Part shown: positions 23,430 through 57,998 of the stretch, piece after piece | Layout of the letters: each line of letters opens with the position of its first letter | How positions within the stretch are numbered: the stretch's first letter is position 1 | IMG/VR virus record: IMGVR_UViG_3300023174_000039 | Span: 62,001-126,000 of that record | DNA length: 64,000 bases | Strand: one strand, 5' to 3' | Position numbers and translations under genes: made by a program | The notes under the pieces: generated by a model | Seen by the model: the letters and a program-made list of their open reading frames with translations, nothing else | Databases searched by the model: none | Told to the model about the DNA's origin: nothing

Positions 23430-23698
23430 TGTACATAGAGTTTTGTATCCCCAGTGGCGGAGGCGGCATGCCAGCACAATATGTCAACTACTGGTTGAAA
23501 CAAAATTTAGAATCTTGGGCCAAACGCTACAACGTTGAATACCAAACCAAGCATATCAAATACACTGTACGAGTAACGTTTGATGATGACAAATTGTATG
23601 ATTTTTTTGCCATGACCTGGCACCCAAAAAGCCAACACATGCAATCTGCTCTTGAACAATATCGCCTAATTGAACCAATGAAACTTGACAGAAGTTGA
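23429..23698 (+). CDS. hypothetical protein (same paralog family)
   Basis: VTFDDDKLYDFFAMTW. Confidence 0.65.
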   Translation: MYIEFCIPSGGGGMPAQYVNYWLKQNLESWAKRYNVEYQTKHIKYTVRVTFDDDKLYDFFAMTWHPKSQHMQSALEQYRLIEPMKLDRS

Positions 23699-23715
23699 GA
23701 TTTCCTGTATAAATA
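23685..23715 (+). promoter_or_regulatory. dual promoter: sigma70 TTGACA-17-TATAAA overlapping T4-type late TATAAATA
   Basis: TTGACA 23685, TATAAATA 23708. Confidence 0.75.
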
Positions 23716-23719
23716 TGTT

Positions 23720-23776
23720 TGTAGATGCCGATGGTCGGGTCTACATTTAACTAGTCATCTTGCTTAATAAAGGAGA
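23720..23776 (+). promoter_or_regulatory. ROSE-like RNA thermometer leader of hsp20
   Basis: 5' hairpin, then UCUUGCUU pairing with SD AAGGAGA with a bulged G. Confidence 0.65.
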
Positions 23777-23782
23777 AAACAA

Positions 23783-24241
23783 ATGACAAAAACTCTCACC
23801 CTTCGTTCTTTCGATATTCCCGCAATTCACAAATTTGGTATCGGGTTCGATAACATGTTTGATGAACTCATGCGTGTGAGTGCCCAACAAGGCAGCACCA
23901 ACTACCCACCTTATGATATTGTACAAGTCAACGATGACGAATACATGATCAGTGTGGCTGTGGCTGGATTTGGGTACGATGATCTCTCAGTGACCAAGGA
24001 TAAAAAGATTTTAGTTATCGAAGGCACACACAGTCGTGAAACTGTGGAAAATGAAGATTCAACTGCAAAATACCTGCACAAAGGAATCAGTGAGCGTAGT
24101 TTCCGTAGAGAATTTCAATTGGCGGATCATGTGGAAATTACCGGAGCACACCTTGAACTTGGTATCCTAAGTGTTCACTTAAAACGTGAAATACCTGAAG
24201 AAGCCAAGCCAAAGACCATTGCTATCACATACACTTCCTAA
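23783..24241 (+). CDS. small heat shock protein Hsp20 (IbpA-like)
   Basis: IGFD..FD, NYPPYDI, AVAGF, YLHKGISERSF.R.F.LAD. Confidence 0.96.
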   Translation: MTKTLTLRSFDIPAIHKFGIGFDNMFDELMRVSAQQGSTNYPPYDIVQVNDDEYMISVAVAGFGYDDLSVTKDKKILVIEGTHSRETVENEDSTAKYLHKGISERSFRREFQLADHVEITGAHLELGILSVHLKREIPEEAKPKTIAITYTS

Positions 24242-24296
24242 TATAATAGTGTAAATACAGTGACGGCACTGTGTCGTCACTGCAACAGGGAAAATC

Positions 24297-24605
24297 ATGT
24301 CACAATCAGAAACACGTACAAAAATTAAACCAAGTGAACAACTCAAAGAGCCACCAATGTACAAGGTCATCTATCTAAATGATAACCAAACCACAATGGA
24401 ATTTGTGATCGAAACCTTGATTGAATTTTTTAATTACAACACAGACACAGCGTTTACCATCACAGAAGACATTCACAATGCTGGATCAGCATGTGTTGCG
24501 GTGTTGCCATACGAGATTGCCGAACAAAAAGGTATTGAAGTAACCCTGGCAGCCAGAAATAATCAGTATCCTTTGCAGATCAAACTTGAGCCTGATCAGG
24601 CCTAA
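24297..24605 (+). CDS. clpS: ClpS N-degron adaptor
   Basis: PPMYKVIYLNDNQTTMEFV...IHNAG...YEIAEQK...YPL. Confidence 0.93.
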   Translation: MSQSETRTKIKPSEQLKEPPMYKVIYLNDNQTTMEFVIETLIEFFNYNTDTAFTITEDIHNAGSACVAVLPYEIAEQKGIEVTLAARNNQYPLQIKLEPDQA

Positions 24606-25393
24606 AACTCCACAGTGATTCGGCGAGGGTAGTACACATGCTGTCCGTACTCGGTATTGCCGCGGCCACGACAATGATTGAGATATCGGATGTTGTCGCG
24701 AATCTGATCAATAGGACTATGATAGTGCCCAAAACACCAGGTGTGTATTTTTCTTTCGGTATCTACCATGTGCGCCTGGCGCATGAGTTGGTTGCCCATG
24801 GTGTTGCATCTCCAGGTGCCTGCTAGATTGATGTCGTGACTGATCAGCACAGGATCAGGCACAGTGTGTGTTATCATTACAATTTTTTTAACATCCTGGT
24901 GTGTTTGTAATCGTTTCACAGAGTTGATCATGTACATGGCATCAGTTGTGGCCATCCTACCAATGGTTTTTACAGTGTCGCCGGTTAATTTGAATTTGTC
25001 TTGATACCACTGAGCACTTTGTGTGGGATCAATGGTTGGGTCAAAATCAAAACCAAACCAGCCATTGGTTCCCAGTATAGCAACACCGTCAATCACAACC
25101 ACATTGTCCTGTAGGTAAACCAAATTGGGGATCTTTTCAAGTCGTGTTACCAAATCAGCATAACTGTAGGTCAGGTTGTTGAGATAATTGGTATGTTCAT
25201 CATTGCCATCAATGTAGAAAACAGCCTGGTAATTTTTGCCCAGATGTGTAAGAACCTCCACTAGATCATTACGATCCATGGCTATGTCCCCTGCAACCAC
25301 AGCAACAGGGCTAGTGGCAATACCCGTCCAGTCAAATCGTGGCCAGGTATCAACGTGTAAATCAGAAATTAAATCAAAGCTAAATGTCATCAT
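24602..25393 (-). CDS. metallophosphoesterase
   Basis: SDLH, AGD, GNDEH, THTVP, FGHYH. Confidence 0.85.
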   Translation of the reverse strand: MMTFSFDLISDLHVDTWPRFDWTGIATSPVAVVAGDIAMDRNDLVEVLTHLGKNYQAVFYIDGNDEHTNYLNNLTYSYADLVTRLEKIPNLVYLQDNVVVIDGVAILGTNGWFGFDFDPTIDPTQSAQWYQDKFKLTGDTVKTIGRMATTDAMYMINSVKRLQTHQDVKKIVMITHTVPDPVLISHDINLAGTWRCNTMGNQLMRQAHMVDTERKIHTWCFGHYHSPIDQIRDNIRYLNHCRGRGNTEYGQHVYYPRRITVEF

Positions 25394-25414
25394 ACATATT
25401 TAAAAGGATTTAAC

Positions 25415-25765
25415 ATGCACATTATTTTTGGAGACGCTGTCAAAGAAATACCTGACAGCTATACTGTGTTAGAGCTCGACACAATAAACACCAACGGAAC
25501 TGTGGTCACAGCCTATTGTGTGGTAGAAAAAATACCATTGCAAGAGTTTCCCTTGATTGATGCTCATATCAAACTACATGAAGATGTGATCAAAAACTAC
25601 CGCCTGCAACACTGGGATTACTGTGAAAAAGCCATTGATGCGCTACAAGGCAAGTGGAACGGAGAAGTTGACAGCTTTTATCAAACGCTACTAGAGCGTA
25701 TAAAAACTCTTAAAGAATCTGTGTTGCCTGATAACTGGGATGGCGTTGTAATCAAAAACACCTAG
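25415..25765 (+). CDS. hypothetical protein
   Basis: YTVLELD...W.G; SD AGGA. Confidence 0.7.
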   Translation: MHIIFGDAVKEIPDSYTVLELDTINTNGTVVTAYCVVEKIPLQEFPLIDAHIKLHEDVIKNYRLQHWDYCEKAIDALQGKWNGEVDSFYQTLLERIKTLKESVLPDNWDGVVIKNT

Positions 25766-32118: not shown

Positions 32119-32760
32119 ATGAAAACCATTGCCCTATTTGTACACCAACCCAAATGCTCTGTACAAAGTGCTAACGGAATTATCGAAGCATTGAGCCCGC
32201 ACTATCGATTCAAAATCTTTACCCGCCACGAAGTTGAGCGGGATTTTTTTGACGATGTGGATGCTGTTTGTTTCCCCGGTGGCATAGGCGATGCCAGCAG
32301 TTTTGATTACTTGACGCGAGAGAATATCACCAAGATTCAAGCCTTTGTGAGCACAGGCGGAGCATATATTGGCATCTGCATGGGTGCGTATTGGGCCAGC
32401 AGCAACTACTTTGACATACTCAAGCATGTTGATGCCAAACAGTACATGCGCAGACCCGGTACAGACACACGCCGACCACATGCTAAAAACATTGACATAA
32501 CCTGGAACAATGATCCAATGAAGATGTTTTGGTATGATGGGTGTGCTCTGGTTGGCGATGAGTCAAAGTTTACAACTGTGGCCCGCTATACAGGAAACAA
32601 CGACCCAATGGCCATCATACAAAACCGCATAGGACTAATAGGGTGTCATCCTGAAAGCACACCGCATTGGTATGAATCTTACAGTTGGATGCGTAGTCGA
32701 TATCATGATGGTTACCATCACGCATTATTATTAAATTTTGTCAACAGTTTATTAGTGTAA
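32119..32760 (+). CDS. BPL_N / class I glutamine amidotransferase-like protein
   Basis: FPGG, YIGICMGAY, GCHPE catalytic triad. Confidence 0.85.
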   Translation: MKTIALFVHQPKCSVQSANGIIEALSPHYRFKIFTRHEVERDFFDDVDAVCFPGGIGDASSFDYLTRENITKIQAFVSTGGAYIGICMGAYWASSNYFDILKHVDAKQYMRRPGTDTRRPHAKNIDITWNNDPMKMFWYDGCALVGDESKFTTVARYTGNNDPMAIIQNRIGLIGCHPESTPHWYESYSWMRSRYHDGYHHALLLNFVNSLLV

Positions 32761-32789
32761 CAAAATTGTAATAGTCTTCGTCTTAAATA
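32755..32789 (+). promoter_or_regulatory. Pho-box-like direct repeat plus late TAAATA promoter
   Basis: TGTAAC(32756)/TGTAAT(32767) with 11-bp period; TAAATA at 32784. Confidence 0.7.
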
Positions 32790-32793
32790 CTTG

Positions 32794-33606
32794 ATGAAGA
32801 CATATCGCTCAATCTTTGTTAGTGATGTCCACCTTGGAACCAAAGATTGTCAAGCCGATCGTCTCAACAACTTTCTCAAACACAACTCCTGTGATACCTT
32901 ATACCTAGTAGGTGATATCATTGACGCCTGGCGCATACAACAAAACCGCTGGCGTTGGAAGCAGAGCCACACCAACGTTGTTCGTCGGGTGTTAGGTCAT
33001 GCCAAGCGTGGTACTAGAGTTGTTTATGTAGCAGGCAACCATGACGAGTTCCTGAGACCAATGATACCATATGGTTTCAGTTTTGGACTTGTAGAAATAC
33101 ACAATCAAATTGAACATATAGGTGCCGACGGCAAGCACTATCTAGTCACTCACGGCGACTTGTTTGATGGTATAACAAGACTGGCACCATGGATAGCATT
33201 CTTAGGAGACAAAGCGTATGACATCGTTCTTACTATCAACTCTAAGTACAATTGGTTACGTCATCGCATGGGTTTTGGGTACTTTAGCATTAGCCAGTTT
33301 CTTAAGCACCGAGTTAAAAAAGCTGTAGACTTTATGTTCAAGTTTGAAGAAAATCTAGCAAACTATTGCAAGAAGCGTGGGTACGATGGAGTAATCTGTG
33401 GACACATACATCATGCAGAAATAAAAGAAATCAACGGTGTTATGTATATGAACGACGGAGACTGGGTTGAATCGTGTACTGCCTTAGTAGAACACTGGGA
33501 CGGACATTGGGAAATAATTACCTGGACCAAGGAGACAGACAATGTGGGTATTGATACTACTGGCAGTTCACTTAAACGACTCAAAAGACGTGCCGGGCCG
33601 AATTGA
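32794..33606 (+). CDS. PlcP-like phospholipase C (LpxH-like metallophosphoesterase)
   Basis: SDVHLGT..CQA, VGDIID.W, GNHDEFLR, HGDLFD, GDKAY, CGHIH, NDGDWVESCTAL. Confidence 0.85.
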   Translation: MKTYRSIFVSDVHLGTKDCQADRLNNFLKHNSCDTLYLVGDIIDAWRIQQNRWRWKQSHTNVVRRVLGHAKRGTRVVYVAGNHDEFLRPMIPYGFSFGLVEIHNQIEHIGADGKHYLVTHGDLFDGITRLAPWIAFLGDKAYDIVLTINSKYNWLRHRMGFGYFSISQFLKHRVKKAVDFMFKFEENLANYCKKRGYDGVICGHIHHAEIKEINGVMYMNDGDWVESCTALVEHWDGHWEIITWTKETDNVGIDTTGSSLKRLKRRAGPN

Positions 33607-33708
33607 ATTGCTATTTCAGGATCGCGCCACATGTGAACAAAGTCTGCAGAGCATGACATATTGGTTGAAGTTTAACCAATTCAAAATTGAAGGAAGGTGT
33701 GTGAAAAA

Positions 33709-34419
33709 ATGAAACTCAGCGATAAAATTACTATTGTAGTACCTTGCAAGAATGAAGAAAACTATATTCATCATTTGTTGGATGCCTTGCGTGGCCAAGA
33801 CATTGGCAACACCAGAATCATCATAGCTGACTGTTCCACTGACGCAACTAGACAAGTGATACAAGATAATAGTGCAGGACTGAATGTTGAAATCATTGAT
33901 GGTGGTCCCGTGAGTATAGCCAAGAACCGCGGAGCAAGATTAGCAACCACTCCATACATCTTGTTTATTGATGCCGATGTACGCTTCTTTAAACCCACAG
34001 TTATTCAAGATGCTGTCAACGCCATTGAACAAAAGAACTTGGATTTAATAGGATTGAAAATTAAATGTTATGACCAAGATCCAAGAGCAAAGATAGGGTT
34101 TATTATTTTTAATACTATAAATCAAGCATTGAAATATTTCTCACCTTTTGCAGTTGGTGCATTCATGCTCACACGCAAAGATCGGTTTGAAGAATTTGGC
34201 GGTTTCCCTGAACAGCTTAGTACCTCTGAGGACTACTTCCTATCAAAGAAATACAATCCCAGAAAGTTTAAAATCATCCGACACCACCTTGGGCAAGACT
34301 CGCGCAGATTCAAGAAGATGGGATATTTAGGTATGGCCAAGTATTTGGTGAAAAATTTTGTCAATCGTAATAATCAAGCATATTGGCACAAATCAGATCA
34401 TAATCGTTACTGGATGTAA
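33709..34419 (+). CDS. glycosyltransferase family 2
   Basis: VVPCKNEE, D.STD, AKNRGA, FIDAD, GGF, ED, SRR. Confidence 0.9.
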   Translation: MKLSDKITIVVPCKNEENYIHHLLDALRGQDIGNTRIIIADCSTDATRQVIQDNSAGLNVEIIDGGPVSIAKNRGARLATTPYILFIDADVRFFKPTVIQDAVNAIEQKNLDLIGLKIKCYDQDPRAKIGFIIFNTINQALKYFSPFAVGAFMLTRKDRFEEFGGFPEQLSTSEDYFLSKKYNPRKFKIIRHHLGQDSRRFKKMGYLGMAKYLVKNFVNRNNQAYWHKSDHNRYWM

Positions 34420-34448
34420 CATTACTGTAACTATCAATCACGTAAATA
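34414..34448 (+). promoter_or_regulatory. Pho-box-like direct repeat plus late TAAATA promoter
   Basis: TGTAAC(34415)/TGTAAC(34426); TAAATA at 34443. Confidence 0.7.
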
Positions 34449-34495: not shown

Positions 34496-35443
34496 ATGAG
34501 ATTAGAAGACCTAGCCACAAGATTATCGGCTGTTGAAGCCAAGTTAGCTACCCTAACTGGAACCACAGTTAACACAGACAGTGCCACAAGCATTGAAGAA
34601 CTAGACACAAGACTATCCATTGTTGAAATTCAAATTGAGCAGTTAATTGCTGTAAAAACACAACAACACGTTGACGCTATTGTTGCCGCAGCCGCACAAG
34701 CAGTTGAAAGCATCCAGGACGCTGTTGCAGAAGTAGTTGCACTTTCTCCAAGTGCAGAAGTACCAGCAGCCGCTGACATTGTGGCTGACGTTGTTCAAAC
34801 TCAAGCAGAAGCACCGGCTGTAGAGCACTCAGAAGTTGCTGACATTGTTTCAGCCGCTGTTCAAGCAGTTGTTGCTGCCGAGCCAGAAGTTGTCATTGAT
34901 ACAGTGGCAATTACAGAAGCTATTATAGCCGCTGTTGCTGATGCACCTTTGCCAACCAAAGCAGGAAATTCCATAGCAAATCAAAATATCTGCGCACCTG
35001 GCAATGAGCGAGTATGGTTATACCAAGGCAACATGAGCTCTACTCAGTGGGAAGATACACTGTTGATCAAGAGTGGTTACACTTGGTTTGCTCCAGAAGC
35101 AGACGTGACTTCTGGTGTTGTTATTGATGGTGATAGCCATGATGGAATCTATCACATTACTGTGGCCGATGCTGGTGGTAATGTTGTCATTCCAACTTCT
35201 GGCAAAGTATATACTTTTGTTCCACCAGCATCTGCAACAGAACCAGCACCAGAAGTGGTGCAACAGGTTGTTGACGCAGTTGTTGAAATCATTGCTGCCG
35301 CAACAGGTGTTGACACAGTTGCTCCTGAAATTGTACAACAAGTTGCTGATGCAATTGCAACTCCAGCAGATCCAGCACTAGACGCTATTGAAGCACGTTT
35401 AAATGTTGCTGAAGCCAAAGTTGATACCTTATTGGGCAAGTGA
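34496..35443 (+). CDS. acidic Ala/Val-rich protein with terminal coiled-coil repeats
   Basis: RLSAVEAK / RLSIVE / RLNVAEAK; SD AAGGAG. Confidence 0.75.
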   Translation: MRLEDLATRLSAVEAKLATLTGTTVNTDSATSIEELDTRLSIVEIQIEQLIAVKTQQHVDAIVAAAAQAVESIQDAVAEVVALSPSAEVPAAADIVADVVQTQAEAPAVEHSEVADIVSAAVQAVVAAEPEVVIDTVAITEAIIAAVADAPLPTKAGNSIANQNICAPGNERVWLYQGNMSSTQWEDTLLIKSGYTWFAPEADVTSGVVIDGDSHDGIYHITVADAGGNVVIPTSGKVYTFVPPASATEPAPEVVQQVVDAVVEIIAAATGVDTVAPEIVQQVADAIATPADPALDAIEARLNVAEAKVDTLLGK

Positions 35444-41219: not shown

Positions 41220-41224
41220 ATTAG

Positions 41225-42133: not shown

Positions 42134-42158
42134 GCTTGTGTCCTTATTAGACTCTTAT

Positions 42159-42761: not shown

Positions 42762-44022
42762 GTGCCTGTTCTTTGTCACAAACAAATGCTGTCACTGCTA
42801 CGTTACCATGCACATGACTTGCTGTGCGAATCATGTCCATCAGAGGATCAACTGCAATCAACAGTACCAACACAGCTTCGCTGGGCAGTTTCAACAAGTC
42901 ACAAACAACTGCTACAGTGGCCACTGTGAGAATACCTGTTGTACCTGCTGATGCAAGCCCTGCCAAGATACTACCAAATAGCACAACTAGTAATCCTGTT
43001 AAGCCTAGTGGTGCATCATAAATGTTGGCAATGAATACTGTGGCAATGGCATAGTAAACGATACTACCAATGCGATTAACAGTGAAGCTGAGTGGCACAG
43101 TTAGTTCAACGCCGCCCTTGTCAAAGTGTAGTTTGTGCAGGGCTTCTTGTGCGTATGGGATACAGGCCAAACTTGAGCGTGAACTCACAGCAACAATCAG
43201 TGTTTCTTTGGTTTCTCGGATCACGGTAGCAAGGCTTAGACCTGAACGTGCCCAGATCACAGCAGTACCTGCCGCAACAACCAACACCCCCCCAACAAAC
43301 TGCTGGAACACAAAGTCAAACATGGTCATGAAGATGCCCACACCAACCTTGCCAACCTGCGATGAAATCATGGCCAACAGCGCAATTGGCAAGAAATAGT
43401 TTAGGAACTTGAAGATGCTGATACTGGCCTGTTGAATACTCTTTAGCACTTCCACCAACATCTTTTGACCTTCTGTTTTCAGGTGCCCCAGTGCCACACC
43501 AAAGATCAAACAAAAGATCACAATCTTTAAGCTCTCACCATTGTTTAGTGTGTTGAAGATGTTTTCAGGAATGAACTTTTCTGCCATCTTGCCTGCATTG
43601 ACAGGTGGTGCAACAGGCATGGGCTCGTGTAAAGTGATATTCAAATCAGTACCACTGTCTTTGTTGTTGACCAGCACACCCAGTTGTGTTTTCTTCTCTG
43701 GTGTCATTTCTGTACCTGTGACCAGCACAGTGCCCACACCAATCACAGCGGCCAGGAACATACTGCCCACAAAGCCAATGATGATTTTGCGTATCAATTC
43801 TTGACTGCCTTCTTTCTGCAGTAGGCCAATGATACCCACCAGGATAGTGGCCAACAAGAATGGTAACACAACAACTTTGAGCAGGCTGATGTAGATGCTG
43901 CCAATGCTGTCAAGACCTGTGCTGAACTCTGGAGCATACACACCAGCTAGAATGCCCACAATGATTGAACCAAGTATGGTCCAGGGGCTGATCAAAAATG
44001 TTTTTAAATGTGCAGTTGTCAT
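42733..44022 (-). CDS. dicarboxylate/amino acid:cation symporter (DAACS, GltP family)
   Basis: Multi-TM; IPENIF, SSRSS hairpin, D...DM.RT in TM8. Confidence 0.92.
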   Translation of the reverse strand: MTTAHLKTFLISPWTILGSIIVGILAGVYAPEFSTGLDSIGSIYISLLKVVVLPFLLATILVGIIGLLQKEGSQELIRKIIIGFVGSMFLAAVIGVGTVLVTGTEMTPEKKTQLGVLVNNKDSGTDLNITLHEPMPVAPPVNAGKMAEKFIPENIFNTLNNGESLKIVIFCLIFGVALGHLKTEGQKMLVEVLKSIQQASISIFKFLNYFLPIALLAMISSQVGKVGVGIFMTMFDFVFQQFVGGVLVVAAGTAVIWARSGLSLATVIRETKETLIVAVSSRSSLACIPYAQEALHKLHFDKGGVELTVPLSFTVNRIGSIVYYAIATVFIANIYDAPLGLTGLLVVLFGSILAGLASAGTTGILTVATVAVVCDLLKLPSEAVLVLLIAVDPLMDMIRTASHVHGNVAVTAFVCDKEQAHGQDQRSPA

Positions 44023-44031
44023 GGGGTGTCC

Positions 44032-44850
44032 TTATTTCTTTTCAGCTTTGTAGCGATCCATCAACTTCTTGGTGTCGATGTTGTTGTATTCATTTTTAAT
44101 CACGTAGTTGACCACGCTCAACAGTTGAATAGCCCGGGGATTCACTGCCACAGCAATGTTGTCTACACTGTCAGAGATGGTGATTGACTTGGTAGTAATT
44201 GCCGCATCTGGCTTTTCAAATGCAATTTTCTTGATTTCAAATTCATCACGGTAAGCGGCAGCGATGTCGCCACGTGTGACTTTGTCAATGATCACATCCC
44301 ACTTGTCTTCAGGCAGGAATTGTGCATTGGGAAAGTTAATTCTAGCAAATGTGTCATAACTGGAGTTGCGGATAAAACTTATCTTGCCGTTGAATTCTCT
44401 AATCACTTGATACACTTCTCTGCCCTGAGTATTCTGGCTCAACCATAGTCGATTCACAACTAAACTTTGGCGCAGTTTGATATAGGGATCACTGAATCTA
44501 ACTACTTGTAACCGTGGACCAGTTACGGATAGTTTACTAACAGCAATATCTGCTCTGCCATCTCTGACCTGTTCTACAACTTCTGCGAAGCTTTCTGCGT
44601 CTCGTCTAAACTGTACAGGAACTCCAAGTAACACCCCAATGCGTCGAGCGATCTCAACGTCAAGGCCGTGTATGGTATCCTCGTCTCCGGAAAAGAATGG
44701 AGGATTGTCTTTTTTGGTCATTGCCACCACAAGCACATTGGCTTTTTTGATTGCGGCAATATCTGCGGGTAGTGGTACAGTTGATGTTGGTAACTGTGCA
44801 GAAGCAACAGTGGCCAACACAAGTAATACGGTGGCGAATAGTTTTTTCAT
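44032..44850 (-). CDS. periplasmic amino-acid substrate-binding protein (SBP family 3)
   Basis: Signal peptide; NPPF, GLDVEIA, ADIAVS.LS.T..R...V.FSDPY. Confidence 0.92.
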   Translation of the reverse strand: MKKLFATVLLVLATVASAQLPTSTVPLPADIAAIKKANVLVVAMTKKDNPPFFSGDEDTIHGLDVEIARRIGVLLGVPVQFRRDAESFAEVVEQVRDGRADIAVSKLSVTGPRLQVVRFSDPYIKLRQSLVVNRLWLSQNTQGREVYQVIREFNGKISFIRNSSYDTFARINFPNAQFLPEDKWDVIIDKVTRGDIAAAYRDEFEIKKIAFEKPDAAITTKSITISDSVDNIAVAVNPRAIQLLSVVNYVIKNEYNNIDTKKLMDRYKAEKK

Positions 44851-44911
44851 TTGTATGTGTCCATAATGTAGGTATTTAATACCCAACGTTATTTATGTTT
44901 TTAGATGTTAC

Positions 44912-45208: not shown

Positions 45209-45266
45209 AATGTTCTCCTATACAATTATTTATTAGTGATTGTTCACTAGAAAAAATTAAGATAAT

Positions 45267-45297
45267 TGTTGCAGTGCAAGGTAAATAATGTTACAAT
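45267..45297 (+). promoter_or_regulatory. PhaR-like box overlapping sigma70 and late promoters
   Basis: TGTTGCAGTGCAA; TTGCAG-17-TACAAT; TAAATA at 45282. Confidence 0.6.
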
Positions 45298-45302
45298 AGA
45301 AC

Positions 45303-45353
45303 ATAGGGTGCTGAATAGGTCGGGCCTTATAGTAAACTCGCTTAAATTAGGAG
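45303..45353 (+). promoter_or_regulatory. ROSE-like leader similar to the hsp20 leader
   Basis: Hairpin with TGC.GA...GGTCGGG; CTCGCTT opposite AGGAG. Confidence 0.55.
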
Positions 45354-45359
45354 AAAATT

Positions 45360-45635
45360 ATGTTTACATTAGACGCAACAATCGACGCCGTTCAAACCGG
45401 TAAAAAACAATTTGTCAAGACATTTGTGCAAAACGAAAAAATTGCCGACGCAATGAACACTTTCATTGATGAGCAAGCCGCTTACACAAAGAAAGCTGCC
45501 AAAGTTGGCACAGACACATTTGCCACTTTGACCAGCGAAATGGTCAAAGCTTCACAAGAAGCCATGAAGTTTGACTACACCAAGTTTGGTGAAGGTATCA
45601 TGAAGGCCTACTCTGCTACTACTTCTAAAAAGTAA
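45360..45635 (+). CDS. phasin-like protein
   Basis: Small amphipathic helical Ala/Lys/Thr-rich protein preceded by a PhaR-like box. Confidence 0.55.
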   Translation: MFTLDATIDAVQTGKKQFVKTFVQNEKIADAMNTFIDEQAAYTKKAAKVGTDTFATLTSEMVKASQEAMKFDYTKFGEGIMKAYSATTSKK

Positions 45636-45659
45636 TTGCCCTGTACTTTTAACAAGTAC

Positions 45660-45710
45660 TTGACATCTAATCCGGTTCGTGCTATAATAACGCATGTACC
45701 GGATTTTTTT
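45660..45710 (+). promoter_or_regulatory. consensus sigma70 promoter overlapping an intrinsic terminator
   Basis: TTGACA-17-TATAAT with the -10 in the loop of AATCCGGT..GC / GC..ACCGGATT-TTTT. Confidence 0.8.
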
Positions 45711-45721
45711 ATGGAGCAATT

Positions 45722-48036: not shown

Positions 48037-48081
48037 GTAATTATCTAAGCAGTTTATTGTTTAGATAATCATTTGTACATT

Positions 48082-48654
48082 ATGGCACTAGATACTACCA
48101 CAACCGAAAACTCTCACAGTCAAGACCTAGCCGATAACGGCATGTATGTTTTCATGGGCGAAGTAGACAATGAAAGCATCCGACCCATTATTGAATGGAT
48201 CTTGCACGAAAACTTTGTTGTAAAGAAAAAGCGCAAAGAACTCCTGCTGATGATCTGTAGTGAGGGTGGCGATATGAGTGCCGCCTTTGCCTTAATAGAT
48301 GTGATGAAGAGTTCCAACATCTTTATTAAAACCGTGGGCCTGGGGCAAATTGCATCAGCAGGCCTGTTGATCTTTCTAGCAGGATCACCGGGACGCAGAA
48401 CACTCACACCTAATACTTCAATCATGAGTCATCAATATGCCTGGGGCAGTGACGGAAAACATCATGAGTTGTTGGCTACCATTAGAGAATTTGAACTCAC
48501 GCAACGTCGCATGGTTCAGCATTACATAACCTGTACAGGATTGAGTGAAGAAGATATCAAGCAACACCTGTTGCCACCACATGATGTTTACTTGAGTGCC
48601 GAAGATGCCCTGAGACTAGGCATCTGTGATCATATCAGCCAGCTGGCTCGTTAA
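48082..48654 (+). CDS. ClpP-like protease (divergent)
   Basis: ICSEGG, GQIASAG (Ser), MSHQ (His), HDVYLSAE.A..LGICD. Confidence 0.88.
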   Translation: MALDTTTTENSHSQDLADNGMYVFMGEVDNESIRPIIEWILHENFVVKKKRKELLLMICSEGGDMSAAFALIDVMKSSNIFIKTVGLGQIASAGLLIFLAGSPGRRTLTPNTSIMSHQYAWGSDGKHHELLATIREFELTQRRMVQHYITCTGLSEEDIKQHLLPPHDVYLSAEDALRLGICDHISQLAR

Positions 48655-50319: not shown

Positions 50320-50943
50320 ATGCCCAGTTTGATCCCAATGGTTGTAGAACAAACCTCAAAAGGCGAGCGCAGTTACGACATTTACAGTCGGCTGCTTCGA
50401 GACCGTGTCATCATGTTGGACACCGAAGTAAGCGAACACATAGCCAGTTTGATTGTGAGTCAATTGTTGTACCTTGAAAGTGAAGACCCTGACAAGGATA
50501 TTTCGCTATATATAAACAGTCCCGGCGGTAGTGTCACTGCTGGACTTGCAATCTACGATACCATGCAGTTTATCAAACCAGACGTTCATACCATTGTTAT
50601 AGGACAAGCTGCCAGCATGGGCAGTTTCTTGGCACAAGCAGGTGCACCGGGCAAGCGTTTTGTGCTGCCTGAAAGTCGCACCATGATTCACCGTGTGAGT
50701 TCAGGTACTCCCAGCACACGTGGCTCAATCCATGTGCAGGAACTGGAGTTTGAAGATGCTCGCAGAATGTTTGAAGAATCAAAACGCATCAACCAACGTC
50801 TTACTGAATTGTATGTCAAACACAACACAGCAGGCAAAACCTATGAAGAACTGTACGAGGCCATGAAGTTTGACACCTTCTTGAGCGCCGAGCAAGCAGT
50901 GGCATATGGACTTGCTGACAAAATTGTAACCAAACGAGTCTAA
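50320..50943 (+). CDS. clpP: ATP-dependent Clp protease proteolytic subunit
   Basis: [42 protein letters not shown]. Confidence 0.97.
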
Positions 50944-53397: not shown

Positions 53398-53502
53398 TTA
53401 TTTCCAATAATTGTACTTGCTGGCAGGGCTCTGACGATACTGGTGAATCATTTCGGCCCAGTTGATTAGACCTTGGTAAATTGTGTTGATGATGTTTTTC
53501 AT
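53398..53502 (-). CDS. 34-aa micro-protein
   Basis: MKNIINTIYQGLINWAEMIHQYRQ...; SD AAGGA, ATGA overlap. Confidence 0.55.
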   Translation of the reverse strand: MKNIINTIYQGLINWAEMIHQYRQSPASKYNYWK

Positions 53503-53666
53503 AGATAGCTTTCCTTTTGAGAGTTAAATTGCTTAATGTAGTTTTCAAGCTGGGCGGCATCGGTAATGCCTTTAGTGCTTAGATATGCATCCAAGCGGCT
53601 TTGGTAATCAGATCCCGGAAACATTTCACCTAAACGTTCCAGTAATCGTGCTATGGTTTGTGTCAT
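53499..53666 (-). CDS. 55-aa DUF3563-like protein
   Basis: RLDAYLS.K...DAAQLENYIKQF; SD AAGGA; TAAATA upstream. Confidence 0.55.
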   Translation of the reverse strand: MTQTIARLLERLGEMFPGSDYQSRLDAYLSTKGITDAAQLENYIKQFNSQKESYL

Positions 53667-53685: not shown

Positions 53686-53715
53686 TATTTACCATTAGAG
53701 TCTGTTGCACTGCAA
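53686..53715 (-). promoter_or_regulatory. PhaR-like box plus late TAAATA promoter
   Basis: TTGCAGTGCAACA on the minus strand, 11 nt upstream of TAAATA. Confidence 0.6.
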
Positions 53716-53745
53716 AAAACTAGTGGTTTTCACTGATTTTTATCA

Positions 53746-53781
53746 GTTGACCATTAAATCACAATTTGCTATAATACTTGT
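53746..53781 (+). promoter_or_regulatory. early promoter cassette, copy 3 (leaderless variant)
   Basis: TTGACC-17-TATAAT-ACTTGT-ATG. Confidence 0.85.
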
Positions 53782-54192
53782 ATGCTATATTTTTCTTATG
53801 GAATGAACACAAATCAGGCCGAAATGGCCGCACGGTGCCCAGGCGCTCAGGCGCTAGGACATGCCCGTTTGATTGATCATGTGTTTCGGTTTGCTACTCA
53901 TGCTGATGTTGTAAAATGTCGCGGGTCTTTTGTGGACGGAGTACTGTGGGAAATCAACAACAGTGATTTGCGAGCTCTTGACAGCCTTGAAGGCTTCCCT
54001 TACTATTACAATCGTCGTGCTCTAAGAGTGGCGTTTGAGGGCAGGACTGTGTTGGCCGAAACTTACTACATGCAACCGGGGCACTTGGACTCAGAACCCA
54101 GCCGTGGTTATTTTGCAACAGTTTTAGAGGGCTATCGTCAGCACAATATACCCCTGGATCAGCTGTACAACAGCATGGAAATCTTTGGTTGA
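53782..54192 (+). CDS. gamma-glutamylcyclotransferase (AIG2/GGCT-like)
   Basis: YFSYGMN, RCP, GVLW, LD.LEG. Confidence 0.88.
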   Translation: MLYFSYGMNTNQAEMAARCPGAQALGHARLIDHVFRFATHADVVKCRGSFVDGVLWEINNSDLRALDSLEGFPYYYNRRALRVAFEGRTVLAETYYMQPGHLDSEPSRGYFATVLEGYRQHNIPLDQLYNSMEIFG

Positions 54193-54242
54193 CCAATAAT
54201 TCTCCTTTTGCTATAATACTTGTATAGTAATTAAAAAGGAGT
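54185..54242 (+). promoter_or_regulatory. early promoter cassette, copy 4
   Basis: TTGACC(54189)-17-TATAAT(54212), SD. Confidence 0.9.
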
Positions 54243-54247: not shown

Positions 54248-54649
54248 ATGGAATTTCATGTTGACGGCCGAGGCCAACCCAAACGGTTTGTTGAGAGCTT
54301 GCTTCCATCCATGCTAGAGCAGTTGAAACTGACTACCAGCAAAAAGTTCCTGCATATTATACTAGACCGAGACCTTGAGGAACTGGGCACCACCATGCCA
54401 CTCAACGGCCTTGACACTTACCTGGTTGTGATCAAACCTGTAAAAGACCGTGCCGCCTTGGGCGCCACCCTGGCACACGAGCTCACCCATGTGGCACAGT
54501 TTGCCAAAGGTACCCTGCAGTTGACACCACGTGGCAAGCTGTGGAAAGGCAAGTACTACGGCCGCCGAGTGCCGTACCTGGACCAACCCTGGGAGATCCA
54601 GGCTTTTGCCAAGCAAGAAATCATCATGCGCAGGGCCATTGAGCTATAA
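54248..54649 (+). CDS. HEXXH zinc metallopeptidase-like phage protein
   Basis: LAHELTHVAQ...PWEIQA. Confidence 0.8.
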   Translation: MEFHVDGRGQPKRFVESLLPSMLEQLKLTTSKKFLHIILDRDLEELGTTMPLNGLDTYLVVIKPVKDRAALGATLAHELTHVAQFAKGTLQLTPRGKLWKGKYYGRRVPYLDQPWEIQAFAKQEIIMRRAIEL

Positions 54650-54732: not shown

Positions 54733-54737
54733 TCGAA

Positions 54738-56219: not shown

Positions 56220-56279
56220 GGAGACCCTTAAATAATTGTTGCAGATCATTGAGTCTGCTTTTTTAAGGAGTCTATTATT

Positions 56280-56510: not shown

Positions 56511-56528
56511 AATAGACTTTGATATCAC

Positions 56529-56560
56529 AAAAAAGCCACCCTAGGGTGGCTTTTGTTTTT
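56529..56560. terminator. bidirectional terminator
   Basis: AAAAGCCACC-CTAG-GGTGGCTTTT between convergent genes. Confidence 0.9.
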
Positions 56561-56787
56561 TACGCTTGGTCTACAAACTTCTTGAGTGCTTCCGCCTCAC
56601 TCACAATAGCCGTTGTTGACGGAAAGTCAGGCATGGTTGGAAACGGTAAACTGTCACGATTGGCATCAGTTAGTTTAGAGTGATACTCGTCTAAAAGCTG
56701 ACTGCGTTTTTCGTAAATTGGCGCCTGGAGGATTTCCTTGGCCAGGGTGAGAAGTTCGAGACGGATCTCGTAAGGTGTTTTGCTCAT
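56560..56787 (-). CDS. conserved phage hypothetical protein
   Basis: MSKTPYEIRLELL.LAK...P....I...A..L..FV; SD AGGAG. Confidence 0.75.
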   Translation of the reverse strand: MSKTPYEIRLELLTLAKEILQAPIYEKRSQLLDEYHSKLTDANRDSLPFPTMPDFPSTTAIVSEAEALKKFVDQA

Positions 56788-56859
56788 GTTTTTCTCCTGT
56801 GTATGTGTGTGTCGTTCAAGTCCCGCCCTATGCAGGACAAGATTGCTACACGAGCATGT

Positions 56860-57291
56860 TTACTTATAGATGTAGTTGATGGTGGTAGAATTTTCGCGGT
56901 AGATACCAGCACCATTCTTCAAATGGAAACGTCGAGCCATTTCGGTCTTGGGACTCAAGGTCACATAGGTATCAATGCCGGGAAATTCGGCTTCGATTGA
57001 CTTCTGGGCTTCTTGGATTAGGATACGACCTGCACCACTGGCGTAACTCCAAATTGTGTAAAATACCGCAGTTGTGGCACTCTCCACAATACCAGCCATG
57101 TCCTCCACAGCTTCAGGAATTGAGTTTAGGAATTTTACACAGGTTACAGCTTCGGTCTTGTCACCGTCCTTGAGCACATACATTCGACTGTTGATATTGA
57201 CGCGGTCGGTCAATGGAATCTCAGGACGAACAGGGTCGTCTTTGATCAGAGTTTCTAGGTCTTCTGTGATGCTTGTGATTGTGTATAACAT
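56860..57291 (-). CDS. GNAT-like phage protein
   Basis: DDPVRP, FYTIWSY..GAGR, TLSP.TEMA..FHL.NGA. Confidence 0.7.
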   Translation of the reverse strand: MLYTITSITEDLETLIKDDPVRPEIPLTDRVNINSRMYVLKDGDKTEAVTCVKFLNSIPEAVEDMAGIVESATTAVFYTIWSYASGAGRILIQEAQKSIEAEFPGIDTYVTLSPKTEMARRFHLKNGAGIYRENSTTINYIYK

Positions 57292-57348
57292 AATGTACGC
57301 CGTTTCTTTATGTATAGTTATTTATCATCGTAATATTACAAAACCATT

Positions 57349-57377
57349 AAAAAACCTGCCTTACGACAGGTTTTTTT
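57349..57377. terminator. intrinsic terminator
   Basis: AAAAAACCTG...CAGGTTTTTT. Confidence 0.8.
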
Positions 57378-57560
57378 GCCTTTTAGGTCCATGCCTCTTG
57401 ATGTTTTTTCAAGGCCAACATCCTGGCCAAGAACAATCTATCTAGCACATAATCGGAAAGGTCTTCATCTTCGTGTATGACTTTTCCAAACTCCAAACTT
57501 CTCCGATTACGTCCAAACGTGACTTCGTCATCTATGACAATGTCATCGTTGTCTTCAAGA

Positions 57561-57779
57561 TTATTTGGCGGCTGGTGCGGCTGCTTTGGCGTCTGCTTTA
57601 GCTGCGTCTTTCTTGGCAGGCTCACTTTTGGCAGGCGTTGCTGGCGCAGGTGCGGCAGGGGCTGGTGCTGTGACAGCAGGTTTGGCTTCCACTTTCTTTT
57701 CTTCTTTCTTGGCAGGTTCTGCGGCAAAAGCGGAAACTGCAAATGCAGTGGTAGCAATAAGAGCGATAAGTTGTTTCAT
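57561..57779 (-). CDS. small secreted Ala/Lys/Pro-rich protein
   Basis: Signal peptide MKQLIALIATTAFAVSAFA; EPAKK repeats; SD AAGGAG. Confidence 0.8.
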   Translation of the reverse strand: MKQLIALIATTAFAVSAFAAEPAKKEEKKVEAKPAVTAPAPAAPAPATPAKSEPAKKDAAKADAKAAAPAAK

Positions 57780-57998
57780 GGTAATCTCCTTGATTAGAAA
57801 CTGGTAGACCAAGACCTTCCTGGCTACACATATACAACGCCATAGCCCTAGAAAACGTTTACGTGTTTTGGTTATATTGCCAAACTATTTTGTTTTGGCA
57901 AATGCTGTGCCAAATATCATTGCGTTTGTGTTACAATACCCGTATAATAGTGACATACTGTACGCAAACAGTATTTTTACATGAAAGGTAAATTTAAC

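What the first reader, a model, noticed from the sequence alone, without database searches (positions are those of the whole stretch)
23685..57913. Phage appears wired into several host stress/nutrient regulons at once
Inference from the separate observations: candidate PhoB (phosphate), PhaR (carbon storage), ROSE (heat) and sigma54/ECF (envelope) inputs occur in the window. The first three sit next to functionally fitting genes, often combined with the phage's own TAAATA element. This would be a lytic phage tuning accessory expression to host physiology.
Basis: inference. Interest (0 to 1): 0.68.

Follow-up and report, generated by a model that had tools for sequence, protein, structure and literature searches.

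The report
Host-type sensors on phage accessory genes
A giant freshwater phage carries three bacterial-type regulatory switches (a heat-shock RNA leader, a carbon-storage operator and a phosphate-box-like repeat) in front of matching borrowed genes, so it probably reads its host's condition; the fourth proposed switch (sigma-54/ECF) is chance.

Summary
The window lies in a 332-kb T4-related jumbo phage from lake metagenomes. None has been shown to function.

1. ROSE: the genome has exactly two ROSE-type leaders, before hsp20 and before a 91-aa gene. Each has two hairpins, with U(U/C)GCU paired to the AGGAG ribosome-binding site. Covariation is strong. Six cultured phages carry the same leader on hsp20.

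2. PhaR: a palindrome (core TTGCA-N-TGCAA) lies over the -35 of the 91-aa gene and before a 55-aa ORF. It matches published PhaR consensuses and the boxes I found before 31 of 36 bacterial phasin genes. The 91-aa protein is a divergent phasin.

3. PhoB: a tandem repeat (TGTAAY-N5-TGTAAY, then 12 nt, then TAAATA) precedes a PlcP-type phospholipase C plus glycosyltransferase, and also the next gene. Some relatives carry canonical TGTCA Pho boxes at this site. Bacterial homologues of the phospholipase carry Pho boxes too.

TAAATA is the most enriched upstream hexamer, and the phage encodes a gp55 homologue. It is most likely a T4-type late promoter.

Sigma-54/ECF matches occur at chance frequency.

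The phage encodes no detectable PhaR or PhoB homologue. Binding by host factors and any response to conditions remain untested.

The parts
23685..23715 (+). hsp20 promoter: TTGACA (23685-23690), a 17-nt spacer, then TATAAATA (23708-23715). A sigma-70-type promoter overlaps the phage TAAATA element.
   Evidence: Read directly from the sequence. In relatives the same place holds either this arrangement or TATAATAAATA.
23719..23788 (+). ROSE-type leader of hsp20. Hairpin 1 is 23720-23745 and has a bulged G. The anti-SD CUUGCU (23759-23764) lies opposite the SD AGGAG (23771-23775). The AUG is at 23783.
   Evidence: ROSE_3 scores 23.0 bits, local E 0.0094. The MFE fold gives both hairpins. The leader is conserved in 52 distinct relatives, with G:C to C:G swaps in hairpin 1.
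23783..24241 (+). Small heat-shock protein (Hsp20 family), 152 aa.
   Evidence: Pfam HSP20, E 6e-17.
32756..32789 (+). Pho-box-like composite promoter: direct repeats TGTAAC-N5-TGTAAT (32756-32771), 12 nt, then TAAATA (32784-32789). The start codon follows 4 nt later and there is no SD.
   Evidence: The composite is conserved before the same gene in relatives. Some relatives have TGTCAC-N5-TGTCAY there, which matches the E. coli Pho box at 15 of 18 positions.
32791..33606 (+). PlcP-type metallophosphoesterase (phospholipase C used in lipid remodelling under phosphate limitation).
   Evidence: Pfam Metallophos. It is 51-57% identical to single-copy bacterial genes. Those genes are followed by GT4 genes in 3 of 4 genomes checked and preceded by tandem GTCA Pho boxes. 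The plcP-agt operon is described in PMC4796936.
33697..34419 (+). Family-2 glycosyltransferase immediately downstream of the PlcP homologue.
   Evidence: Pfam Glycos_transf_2, E 1.4e-20, and Glyco_transf_21, E 4.4e-8.
34415..34448 (+). Second Pho-box-like composite: TGTAAC-N5-TGTAAC, 12 nt, then TAAATA (34443-34448). It lies before the gene at 34496-35443.
   Evidence: Second sites at the equivalent position occur in relatives.
34496..35443 (+). 315-aa protein of unknown function, behind the second composite promoter.
   Evidence: No family found in Pfam, PHROGs, NCBIfam or the ESM Atlas.
45267..45297 (+). Promoter of the phasin-like gene. The PhaR-type palindrome is 45267-45281 (centre 45274), followed by TAAATA (45282-45287) and a -10 TACAAT (45292-45297).
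   Evidence: Of 62 distinct relatives, 40 keep a strict YGCRNYGCR core (background 0.018 per 130 nt). The centre lies 18-19 nt before the -10 in 32 of 39.
45302..45365 (+). ROSE-type leader of the phasin-like gene. Hairpin 1 is 45303-45330. The anti-SD CUCGCU (45337-45342) lies opposite AGGAG (45349-45353). The AUG is at 45360.
   Evidence: ROSE_3 scores 25.7 bits, local E 0.002. Fold. Across 50 sequences 95.3% of cells pair, 9 pairs show compensatory change, and 0 of 500 shuffles reach the observed score.
45360..45635 (+). 91-aa all-helical protein, a divergent member of the phasin family.
   Evidence: Pfam Phasin_2 is the only hit (E 0.014; 16.1 bits against a cut-off of 24.9). Of 80 family representatives, 4 hit Phasin_2. 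The nearest ESM clusters are PHA-related. hhalign gives probability 62%, P 7e-5. The family HMM scores real phasins up to 26.7 bits, against a maximum of 8.2 for 720 shuffled phasins.
53686..53718 (-). Second PhaR-type palindrome (53702-53718, centre 53710), 19 nt upstream of TAAATA (53691-53686 on the minus strand).
   Evidence: 17 of 17 match to YTKNTGCRNYGCANMAR (consensus from PMC12849132). Relatives carry related boxes followed by TAAATA before the same ORF.
53499..53666 (-). Conserved 55-aa ORF downstream of the second palindrome. Function unknown.
   Evidence: 235 relatives at 75-93% identity in viral contigs. Only a weak DUF3563 hit, E 0.026.
57897..57912 (-). Sigma-54-like string with one mismatch. 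Judged a chance match, or part of an inverted repeat inside the 3' end of ORF 57885-58310.

Best explanation
The window belongs to a T4-related jumbo phage of freshwater lakes, about 332 kb long. Three accessory modules of bacterial origin have kept the cis-regulatory sensor typical of their bacterial counterparts. Each sensor has been grafted onto phage promoters.

(1) ROSE leaders. hsp20 and a divergent phasin gene are each transcribed with a two-hairpin ROSE-type leader. The 3' hairpin pairs U(U/C)GCU, with a bulged G, to the AGGAG ribosome-binding site. Translation would therefore be held back until the hairpin opens. The trigger could be higher temperature or titration of a small heat-shock protein.

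(2) PhaR operator. The phasin gene and a 55-aa ORF carry a palindrome (core TTGCA-N-TGCAA) centred near -30. It is indistinguishable from PhaR operators of bacterial phasin genes. Free host PhaR would block these promoters. PhaR bound to polyhydroxyalkanoate granules would release them.

(3) Pho-box-like repeat. A PlcP-type phospholipase C plus a glycosyltransferase, and the next gene, sit behind a tandem direct repeat with 11-bp period, 12 nt upstream of TAAATA. This is the geometry of a PhoB-dependent promoter. Phosphate-starved hosts would switch on the breakdown of phospholipids.

TAAATA is the phage's own late-promoter core, read by a gp55-type sigma factor.

Shown: the motifs, their rarity, their conservation and covariation, and the gene identities. 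Inferred: which proteins bind, and every response to conditions.
For: Phage type. There are T4 gp43, gp44, gp46 and gp47 homologues, and a gp55 homologue (E 1.2e-6) lying next to the gp47 and gp46 homologues. TAAATA is enriched 7.7-fold upstream of genes and has no -35 partner.

ROSE. Only two such leaders exist in the genome. ROSE_3 is the best Rfam match for both. In the alignment 95.3% of cells pair, against 33-61% for slid controls; 9 pairs show compensatory change; 0 of 500 shuffles reach the observed score. Bacterial homologues of this Hsp20 carry the same two-hairpin leader behind CTTGAA-type promoters. Six cultured phages have it before hsp20.

PhaR. The boxes match the consensuses in PMC12849132 and PMC12542648. 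Of 36 bacterial phasin genes examined, 31 have such boxes, and some 15-mers are identical to phage boxes. Position relative to the -10 is conserved. The 91-aa family HMM scores real phasins up to 26.7 bits, against at most 8.2 for shuffled ones.

PhoB. The composite is rare in the genome and conserved with a fixed length of 34 nt. Some relatives have TGTCA half-sites there. The gene is 51-57% identical to bacterial plcP-type genes that carry Pho boxes and GT4 neighbours (PMC4796936).

No PhaR, PhoB-type or MotA homologue was found in the phage.

Precedent. Cyanophage genes are controlled by host PhoBR (PMC10976474).
Against: - There are no expression or binding data. No RNA run holds this phage.
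- Both ROSE hits fall below the Rfam gathering score. The energy model shows no clear temperature switch: the hsp20 SD is about as accessible as control sites (0.35 against 0.39).
- The half-site in this phage is TGTAA, so the match to the E. coli Pho box is only 13 of 18.
- PhoB acts through sigma-70 region 4, which gp55 lacks. A PhoB box in front of a late-type TAAATA needs TAAATA to serve sigma-70 as well.
- Many relatives have palindromes with a 4-nt rather than 3-nt centre, which is odd for a single dimeric regulator.
- The host is unknown, so its PhaR, PhoB and PHA metabolism cannot be checked.
- The phasin assignment is below Pfam's threshold.
- The degenerate PhaR consensus is not enriched genome-wide.
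Confidence: 0.6

Rival explanations
1. The elements form the phage's own regulon. The ROSE-type leaders are binding sites through which the phage Hsp20 represses its own mRNA and the phasin mRNA, which would make them a sensor of aggregated protein. The palindromes and direct repeats are read by uncharacterised phage-encoded factors that time middle or late expression. Host PhaR and PhoB are not involved.
For: E. coli IbpA represses its own translation through its 5' UTR (PMC10474464, found). Only two phage genes share the leader. Bacterial phasin leaders lack it, with 1 of 36 showing the pattern. Half-sites switch together within a phage, either TGTAA throughout or TGTCA throughout. Centres of 4 nt are common in relatives. 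All three DNA elements are tied to the phage-specific TAAATA.
Against: The phage has no homologue of PhaR, of PhoB/OmpR winged-helix proteins or of MotA. The palindrome is identical to boxes upstream of bacterial phasin genes. The downstream genes are exactly the classic targets of PhaR and PhoB. It would be a coincidence for phage factors to copy both the specificities and the targets.
Confidence: 0.2
2. The elements are inert passengers. They were carried in with horizontally acquired hsp20, phasin and plcP genes and have no regulatory role in the phage.
For: All three genes have close bacterial counterparts that carry the same elements.
Against: The elements persist in dozens of relatives whose flanking intergenic sequence has diverged. 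Both leaders show compensatory changes. Spacing to the phage promoter elements is fixed. The bacterial sigma-32-type promoter has been replaced while the leader was kept. The phasin gene combines an operator and a leader that do not occur together in bacteria.
Confidence: 0.07
3. All four motif classes are chance resemblances to well-known consensus sequences in an AT-rich phage genome.
For: Genome-wide counts for the PhaR consensus, the Pho box, sigma-54 and sigma-E patterns do not exceed Markov simulations. The sigma-54/ECF candidates fit this reading.
Against: For ROSE, the PhaR boxes and the direct repeats, chance does not explain their restriction to intergenic promoters of fitting genes, their conservation, or their covariation.
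Confidence: 0.03

Closest known systems
Short ROSE-like RNA thermometers of ibpA/hsp20 genes (Rfam ROSE_3, RF02523; Pseudomonas ibpA, PMC3669281)
   Same: Two hairpins. Hairpin 1 has the GAUGCC...GGGUC core and a bulged G. The 3' hairpin pairs U(U/C)GCU with the SD. The element lies directly before a small heat-shock gene.
   Different: The scores are below the gathering threshold. The leader sits behind a phage sigma-70/TAAATA promoter instead of a sigma-32 promoter. A second copy controls a phasin-like gene. Temperature response is untested.
PhaR (AniA) operators of phasin promoters in alpha- and beta-proteobacteria (PMC12849132, PMC12542648)
   Same: Same TGC-RNY-GCA core and flanks. The operator overlaps the -35 of a phasin-family gene.
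   Different: It is located in a lytic phage genome that encodes no PhaR. It is combined with a ROSE-type leader and with TAAATA. Relatives often have a centre one base longer.
PhoB-dependent promoters, and cyanophage genes controlled by host PhoBR (PMC10976474; plcP-agt operons with Pho boxes, PMC4796936)
   Same: A tandem direct repeat with 11-bp period replaces the -35 and lies about 11-12 nt upstream of the -10-like element. The downstream gene is a known Pho-regulon member, plcP, followed by a glycosyltransferase.
   Different: In this phage the half-site is TGTAA, though it is TGTCA in some relatives. The -10 element is the late-type TAAATA. The glycosyltransferase is GT2, not GT4. The mRNA is apparently leaderless.
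T4 late promoters (TATAAATA, gp55)
   Same: An AT-rich -10-type element without a -35, and a gp55 homologue next to gp47 and gp46 homologues.
   Different: The conserved core is only TAAATA. A gp45 homologue was not clearly detected with the T4 protein (E 0.048).

Membership tests
ROSE-like RNA thermometer (ROSE_3) | Lies in the 5' UTR of a small heat-shock gene and ends at the start codon | tested here: met
   23719-23788 ends at the hsp20 AUG. The second copy precedes a phasin-like gene, not an hsp gene.
ROSE-like RNA thermometer (ROSE_3) | 3' hairpin pairs U(U/C)GCU, with a bulged G, to the SD | tested here: met
   CUUGCU/AGGAG and CUCGCU/AGGAG. Helix 2 is 99.2% paired across 50 relatives, with CG-to-UA and C/U alternation.
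ROSE-like RNA thermometer (ROSE_3) | Score at or above the Rfam gathering threshold (43 bits) | tested here: not met
   23.0 and 25.7 bits. The Melnitz phage hsp20 leader scores 34.1 bits.
ROSE-like RNA thermometer (ROSE_3) | Temperature-dependent opening of the SD hairpin and temperature-dependent translation | tested here: inconclusive
   In the ViennaRNA ensemble the phasin-gene leader opens gradually (0.05 to 0.24 between 4 and 42 degrees C). The hsp20 leader does not differ from controls. This needs an experiment.
PhaR operator | Palindrome with TGC-RNY-GCA core matching the published consensus | tested here: met
   53702-53718 matches at 17 of 17 positions and 45267-45281 at 14 of 17. 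The boxes are identical or near-identical to those before 31 of 36 bacterial phasin genes.
PhaR operator | Overlaps core promoter elements of a phasin gene | tested here: met
   The centre lies 18-19 nt upstream of the -10 hexamer in 32 of 39 relatives. The gene is a divergent phasin.
PhaR operator | Bound by PhaR and relieved by PHA granules; host has PhaR and makes PHA | not testable with these tools
   The host is unknown. The phage encodes no PhaR.
Pho box / PhoB-dependent promoter | Two 7-bp direct repeats CTGTCAT with 11-bp period | tested here: inconclusive
   The period is met. The half-sites are TGTAA, so the match to the E. coli consensus is 13 of 18. Relatives have TGTCA half-sites with 15 of 18.
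Pho box / PhoB-dependent promoter | Replaces the -35, about 10-12 nt upstream of the -10 element | tested here: met
   Exactly 12 nt to TAAATA at both sites and in all relatives carrying the composite.
Pho box / PhoB-dependent promoter | Controls a phosphate-starvation gene | tested here: met
   The gene is a PlcP-type homologue. Its bacterial counterparts have Pho boxes and GT4 neighbours (PMC4796936).
Pho box / PhoB-dependent promoter | PhoB binding and induction by phosphate limitation | not testable with these tools
   No RNA runs hold this phage. PMC10976474 warns that predicted phage Pho boxes often fail in binding assays.
Sigma-54 promoter | TGGCAC-N5-TTGCW in an intergenic region, more frequent than chance, with an enhancer-binding activator | tested here: not met
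   40 sites with at most 1 mismatch against 26.5 expected; 39 of the 40 lie in coding sequence, and the one exception lies outside the window. The site at 57897-57912 lies in an ORF. The PF00158 hits are ClpX and a ClpA-like AAA+ protein.
ECF sigma promoter | GGAACTT-N16-TCNAA or GAAC...CGTC type site, more frequent than chance, before an envelope gene | tested here: not met
   Counts are near simulation (10 against 5.4, and 5 against 15.4). No convincing intergenic site was found. The phage has no Sigma70_r2 protein.
Phasin (Pfam Phasin_2) | Scores above the Pfam gathering threshold | tested here: not met
   16.1 bits against 24.9.
Phasin (Pfam Phasin_2) | Profile-level similarity to bona fide phasins beyond what composition explains | tested here: met
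   The family HMM scores real phasins up to 26.7 bits (8 of 36 above 17), against at most 8.2 for 720 shuffled phasins. hhalign gives P 7e-5.
T4-type late promoter | TATAAATA-like -10 element without a -35, plus a gp55 sigma factor | tested here: met
   gp45 is inconclusive (E 0.048).

The most novel reading that the evidence does not exclude
A single lytic jumbo phage gates three borrowed modules with three different host signals. PlcP plus a glycosyltransferase respond to phosphate status through PhoB. A phage phasin and a 55-aa protein respond to carbon-storage status through PhaR. Hsp20 and the phasin respond to temperature or proteotoxic stress through ROSE-type leaders. In addition, ROSE-type leaders would be a general feature of phage hsp20 genes, from cyanophages to pelagiphages, which I found described nowhere in the searched library.
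Probability: 0.4. Interest if true: 0.8.

Novelty: new variant of a known kind. Interest (0 to 1): 0.64.

Why it matters
Control of phage auxiliary genes by host regulators is established only for the phosphate system of cyanophages. Here the same logic appears for two further signals, and all three occur in one genome.

It also points to gene types that I did not find reported for phages in the searchable library:
- a phasin;
- a PlcP-type lipid-remodelling phospholipase C;
- an RNA-thermometer-type leader that recurs before hsp20 in unrelated cultured phages.

If this is confirmed, it gives testable handles on how abundant freshwater jumbo phages adjust infection to host nutrient and stress state. 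It would also re-interpret a published 'Pho box' before cyanophage hsp20 that did not bind PhoB.

Tried and rejected
- No megablast match to cultured phages. The 91-aa protein has no tblastn match among them.
- The genome search with ROSE_3 on the phage's own genome missed both leaders, because its first-look filter is too coarse. I replaced it with a pattern scan.
- A PDB profile search and structure searches of the 91-aa protein were uninformative; it is a short helical protein.
- The first hhalign, against only 7 phasins, was negative. It improved with 36 phasins.
- The DUF3563 lead for the 55-aa ORF went nowhere: the family was not found in 5 bacterial genomes or in the control genomes.
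- Host identification through the closest Hsp20 and PlcP homologues failed. Identities stay at 45-57% across proteobacteria, and genome names are hidden. Two Bacteroidota MAG contigs with 76-82% Hsp20 identity look like mis-binned phage DNA, because the phage uses strong SD sites and sigma-70 promoters.
- The 315-aa protein at 34496-35443 remains without a family.
- No RNA run holds the window.
- The sigma-54 and ECF scans gave nothing above chance.
- One Pfam call failed on a wrong frame and was repeated.
- One Python scan timed out and was vectorised.
- Two unpublished genomes (G044, G345) were counted only in tallies. No locus or claim rests on them.

Full report
**What the window is.** The window is bases 62,001-126,000 of a 331,654-bp IMG/VR virus record that CheckV rates 95% complete. 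It has no near relative among cultured phages. It does belong to a large group of 320-365-kb phage contigs. Near-identical DNA occurs in lake and freshwater metagenomes from 14 studies. tblastn with T4 proteins finds homologues of gp43 (E 1e-55), gp44, gp46 and gp47. It also finds a gp55 late sigma factor (35% identity over 74 residues, E 1.2e-6) lying next to the gp47 and gp46 homologues. The phage is therefore a distant T4-type jumbo phage. Its genes use strong AGGAG ribosome-binding sites and TTGACA/TATAAT promoters. That points to a proteobacterial-type host rather than a Bacteroidota host.

**Gene content of the flagged interval.** In order along the window:
- ClpX (22007-23197)
- ribosomal protein S21 (23205-23429)
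- Hsp20 (23783-24241)
- ClpS (24297-24605)
- a UDP-glucose dehydrogenase-like protein
- UvdE
- a Metallophos protein (32791-33606)
- a GT2 glycosyltransferase (33697-34419)
- a block of cellular-type genes on the minus strand (39757-44886)
- a 91-aa protein (45360-45635)
- two ClpP paralogues
- a radical-SAM protein
- a GGACT protein
- many small ORFs

**The phage's own TAAATA element is real.** TAAATA is the most enriched hexamer in the 58 nt upstream of genes (7.7-fold). Of its 170 copies, 67 lie in the 5.4% of the genome that is intergenic. Aligned sites show no conserved -35 partner. Together with the gp55 homologue, this fits a T4-type late promoter core (T4 consensus TATAAATA). That assignment is an inference; no transcript ends are available.

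**ROSE: the hits.** An E-value-mode Rfam scan of the window gives two sub-threshold ROSE_3 hits (gathering score 43). One is at 23719-23788 (23.0 bits) and one at 45302-45365 (25.7 bits). Each ends at a start codon. The first precedes hsp20, the classic ROSE target.

**ROSE: the structure.** Both leaders fold into the family's two hairpins:
- Hairpin 1 has the GAUGCC...GGGUC core and a bulged G.
- The 3' hairpin pairs CUUGCU or CUCGCU with AGGAG around a bulged G.
- An outer helix reaches the AUG region.

**ROSE: rarity and conservation.** A genome-wide pattern scan finds only these two leaders before genes; about 2 random in-ORF matches are expected and 3 were seen. Upstream of hsp20, 52 distinct relatives keep the leader. 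Hairpin 1 swaps G:C for C:G. For the 91-aa gene, I tested a named structure on 50 distinct sequences:
- 95.3% of cells form standard pairs, against 33-61% when the partners are slid.
- 9 pairs have compensatory changes.
- 80 cells have changes on both sides, against 24.9 in shuffles.
- 0 of 500 shuffles reach the observed covariation score.
- The anti-SD/SD helix is 99.2% paired, and it includes CG-to-UA changes that track AGGAG-to-AGGAA variants.

**ROSE: comparison with bacteria and other phages.** Bacterial homologues of this Hsp20 are mostly alphaproteobacterial and 40-48% identical. They carry the same two-hairpin leader, but behind CTTGAA-type heat-shock promoters. The phage has replaced that promoter with TTGACA-N17-TATAAATA, or TATAATAAATA in relatives. 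The same leader stands before hsp20 in six cultured phages of different lineages: three cyanophages, a pelagiphage, a Methylophilales phage and a Sinorhizobium jumbo phage. In most of them it follows TAAATA. The Melnitz leader reaches 34.1 bits. I found no paper that links phage hsp20 with an RNA thermometer. PMC10976474 lists a 'putative Pho box' before S-PM2 hsp20 that did not bind PhoB. The string it lists contains the anti-SD motif (ACTCGCTTAAAT) of this leader type.

**ROSE: caveats.**
- Nearest-neighbour energy predictions do not show a clear thermal switch.
- E. coli IbpA represses translation of its own mRNA through its 5' UTR (PMC10474464), so the signal read may be chaperone load rather than temperature.

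**PhaR: the sites.** Upstream of the 91-aa gene lies TGTTGCAGTGCAAGG (45267-45281). A second site, CTGTTGCACTGCAAAAA (53702-53718), lies before a 55-aa ORF on the minus strand. These are the only two intergenic TTGC-N3-GCAA palindromes in the genome.

**PhaR: match to known operators.**
- The second site matches the R. eutropha PhaR consensus YTKNTGCRNYGCANMAR at all 17 positions, and the first at 14 of 17 (PMC12849132).
- Both contain the S. meliloti core YGCRNYGCR (PMC12542648).
- The degenerate consensus alone is not enriched in the genome, with 1 perfect site against 0.58 expected. The case therefore rests on location and conservation.
- Of 62 distinct relatives, 40 keep the strict core before the 91-aa gene (background 0.018 per 130 nt). 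Most of the rest have near-variants.
- The centre lies 18-19 nt upstream of the TACAAT/TATAAT -10 in 32 of 39 cases. The left half-site therefore coincides with the -35.

**PhaR: comparison with bacterial phasin genes.** I fetched 36 bona fide Phasin_2 genes from alpha- and beta-proteobacterial genomes. Of these, 31 have the same boxes within 300 nt upstream. They include 15-mers identical to those of phage relatives, such as TGTTGCACTGCAACA and TGTTGCAGTGCAACA.

**The 91-aa protein is a divergent phasin.** It is all-helical and belongs to a very large, conserved phage family with 2,349 clusters. The evidence for a phasin assignment:
- Pfam gives Phasin_2 as its only hit, though below threshold (E 0.014).
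- Of 80 family representatives, 4 hit Phasin_2 (best E 1.2e-4), while every other family is hit only once.
- The nearest named ESM clusters are Phasin_2, PHB_acc and PHA_synth_III_E.
- hhalign against the 36 phasins gives probability 62%, P 7e-5.
- An HMM of the phage family scores real phasins up to 26.7 bits (8 above 17), whereas 720 composition-matched shuffles reach at most 8.2 bits.

Bacterial phasin leaders lack the ROSE motif: only 1 of 36 shows the pattern. The pairing of a PhaR-type operator with a ROSE-type leader is therefore specific to the phage.

**PhaR: remaining points.** The phage encodes no detectable PhaR domain. The 55-aa ORF is a real, conserved gene with 235 relatives. 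In relatives it is preceded by related palindromes followed by TAAATA. Many of those palindromes have a 4-nt instead of a 3-nt centre, and I cannot explain this.

**PhoB: the sites.** No intergenic site comes within 4 mismatches of the E. coli Pho box, and genome-wide counts are below simulation. Two sites match at 13 of 18: 32755 and 34414. Both have the form TGTAAC-N5-TGTAAY followed by exactly 12 nt and then TAAATA. TGTAA-N6-TGTAA occurs only three times in the genome, and these are the two intergenic cases.

**PhoB: conservation.** In relatives the composite keeps a fixed length of 34 nt. It recurs before the same gene and at one or two neighbouring promoters. In a subset of phages every half-site is TGTCA, which gives canonical Pho boxes with 15 of 18 matches.

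**PhoB: the gene is a PlcP-type enzyme.**
- The gene behind the first site (32791-33606, Metallophos) is 51-57% identical to single-copy genes found in 82 of 301 sampled genomes of one proteobacterial class, and in alphaproteobacteria.
- In three of four genomes inspected that bacterial gene is followed by a GT4 glycosyltransferase.
- It is preceded by tandem GTCA(T/C) repeats in several.
- This is the plcP-agt lipid-remodelling operon with its Pho box, as described in PMC4796936.

The phage gene is followed by a GT2 glycosyltransferase. Its start codon lies 4 nt after TAAATA with no SD, which suggests a leaderless mRNA. That is an inference.

**PhoB: regulators and precedent.** No PhoB/OmpR-type or MotA-type protein is encoded by the phage. 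Control of cyanophage genes by host PhoBR is the known precedent. The same paper warns that predicted phage Pho boxes often fail experimentally (PMC10976474).

**PhoB: mechanistic difficulty.** PhoB activates through sigma-70 region 4, which gp55 lacks. For PhoB to act here, TAAATA would have to serve the sigma-70 holoenzyme as a weak -10 as well.

**Sigma-54 and ECF.** Counts of sigma-54 and sigma-E/ECF-type patterns are close to Markov expectations. The site at the finding's right edge (57897-57912, minus strand) has one mismatch and lies inside the 3' end of ORF 57885-58310. It is part of an inverted repeat. It is kept only in the closest of five relatives. The weak Sigma54_activat hits are ClpX and a ClpA-like AAA+ protein. 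No Sigma70_r2 protein is present. I reject this part of the finding.

**Synthesis.** Three modules of bacterial origin each keep the sensor typical of their bacterial counterparts: hsp20; a phasin with a 55-aa gene; and plcP with a glycosyltransferase and a neighbouring gene. In each case the bacterial core promoter has been replaced by, or fused to, phage promoter elements.

Conservation, fixed spacing and covariation argue that the elements are functional. They argue against inert passengers and against chance. Whether host PhaR and PhoB or unknown phage factors read the DNA sites remains open. So does the question of whether the leaders sense temperature or chaperone load. I put about 0.6 on the host-wiring reading for at least two of the three inputs.

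**Limits.**
- The host is unknown.
- There are no RNA data, and read laying was not used.
- No alternative genetic code was needed.
- Two unpublished genomes (G044, G345) appear only in tallies.

Noticed in passing
window 22007-24605, 48073-48654 and 50320-50943: A proteostasis set: ClpX, ribosomal protein S21, an 89-aa ORF, Hsp20 and ClpS lie in a row, with two ClpP paralogues further on. A ClpA-like 757-aa AAA+ gene lies elsewhere in the genome (G000 173543-174796).
   Followed up: partly
window 39757-44886 (minus strand): A block of cellular-type genes whose middle (about 40,001-42,000) has higher GC (0.50 against about 0.44): an Asp/Glu racemase, a PF10118 metal hydrolase, a Gly-rich protein, a Na:dicarboxylate symporter family transporter and an SBP_bac_3 binding protein. 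It looks like a recent host-derived island.
   Followed up: no
window 45233-45250; compare 53726-53741: An AT-rich inverted repeat (TTAGTGA-N4-TCACTAG type) is conserved upstream of the phasin-like gene in most relatives. A similar AGTG-N5-CACT repeat lies at the 55-aa ORF locus. In the closest relatives it takes the place of the PhaR-type box there. Its role is unknown.
   Followed up: partly
L225-L304 and L082-L161 (relatives): Many relatives carry palindromes of the type TGTGC-N4-GCACA. This is the PhaR-type box with one extra central base, at the same promoter positions. It is unexplained for a single dimeric regulator.
   Followed up: partly
L395-L400 (cultured phages S-SSM4, S-PRM1, P-RSM1, HTVC115P, Melnitz, Phosso): All six hsp20 genes have a ROSE-type two-hairpin leader, most of them behind TAAATA. 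The 'putative Pho box' reported before S-PM2 hsp20 (PMC10976474), which did not bind PhoB, contains the anti-SD motif of this leader type.
   Followed up: partly
window 53766-53782 and 54207-54223: An identical 17-mer promoter-like string (TTTGCTATAATACTTGT) precedes two consecutive genes: GGACT at 53782 and a DUF6782-like gene at 54248.
   Followed up: no
window 45636-45715: Downstream of the phasin-like gene, a consensus sigma-70 promoter (TTGACA-N17-TATAAT) is interleaved with a GC-rich hairpin followed by a T-run. A terminator and the next promoter therefore overlap. The following 400 nt contain only very short ORFs.
   Followed up: no
window 32784-32796, and genome-wide: TAAATA often lies 0-9 nt before start codons: 32 of 82 upstream occurrences in a crude gene map. 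Examples include the PlcP homologue, which has no SD. This may indicate leaderless mRNAs, or it may be partly an artefact of ORF start calls and TAA stop codons.
   Followed up: no
L163, L164 (genome contigs): Two short contigs binned into Bacteroidota MAGs (Sediminibacterium, Haliscomenobacter) encode Hsp20 at 76-82% identity to the phage protein. L164 also carries the 3' end of the phage-type leader (the contig starts 22 nt before the gene). L163 starts inside the gene, so its leader cannot be seen. They are probably phage DNA binned by mistake, not evidence for the host.
   Followed up: partly
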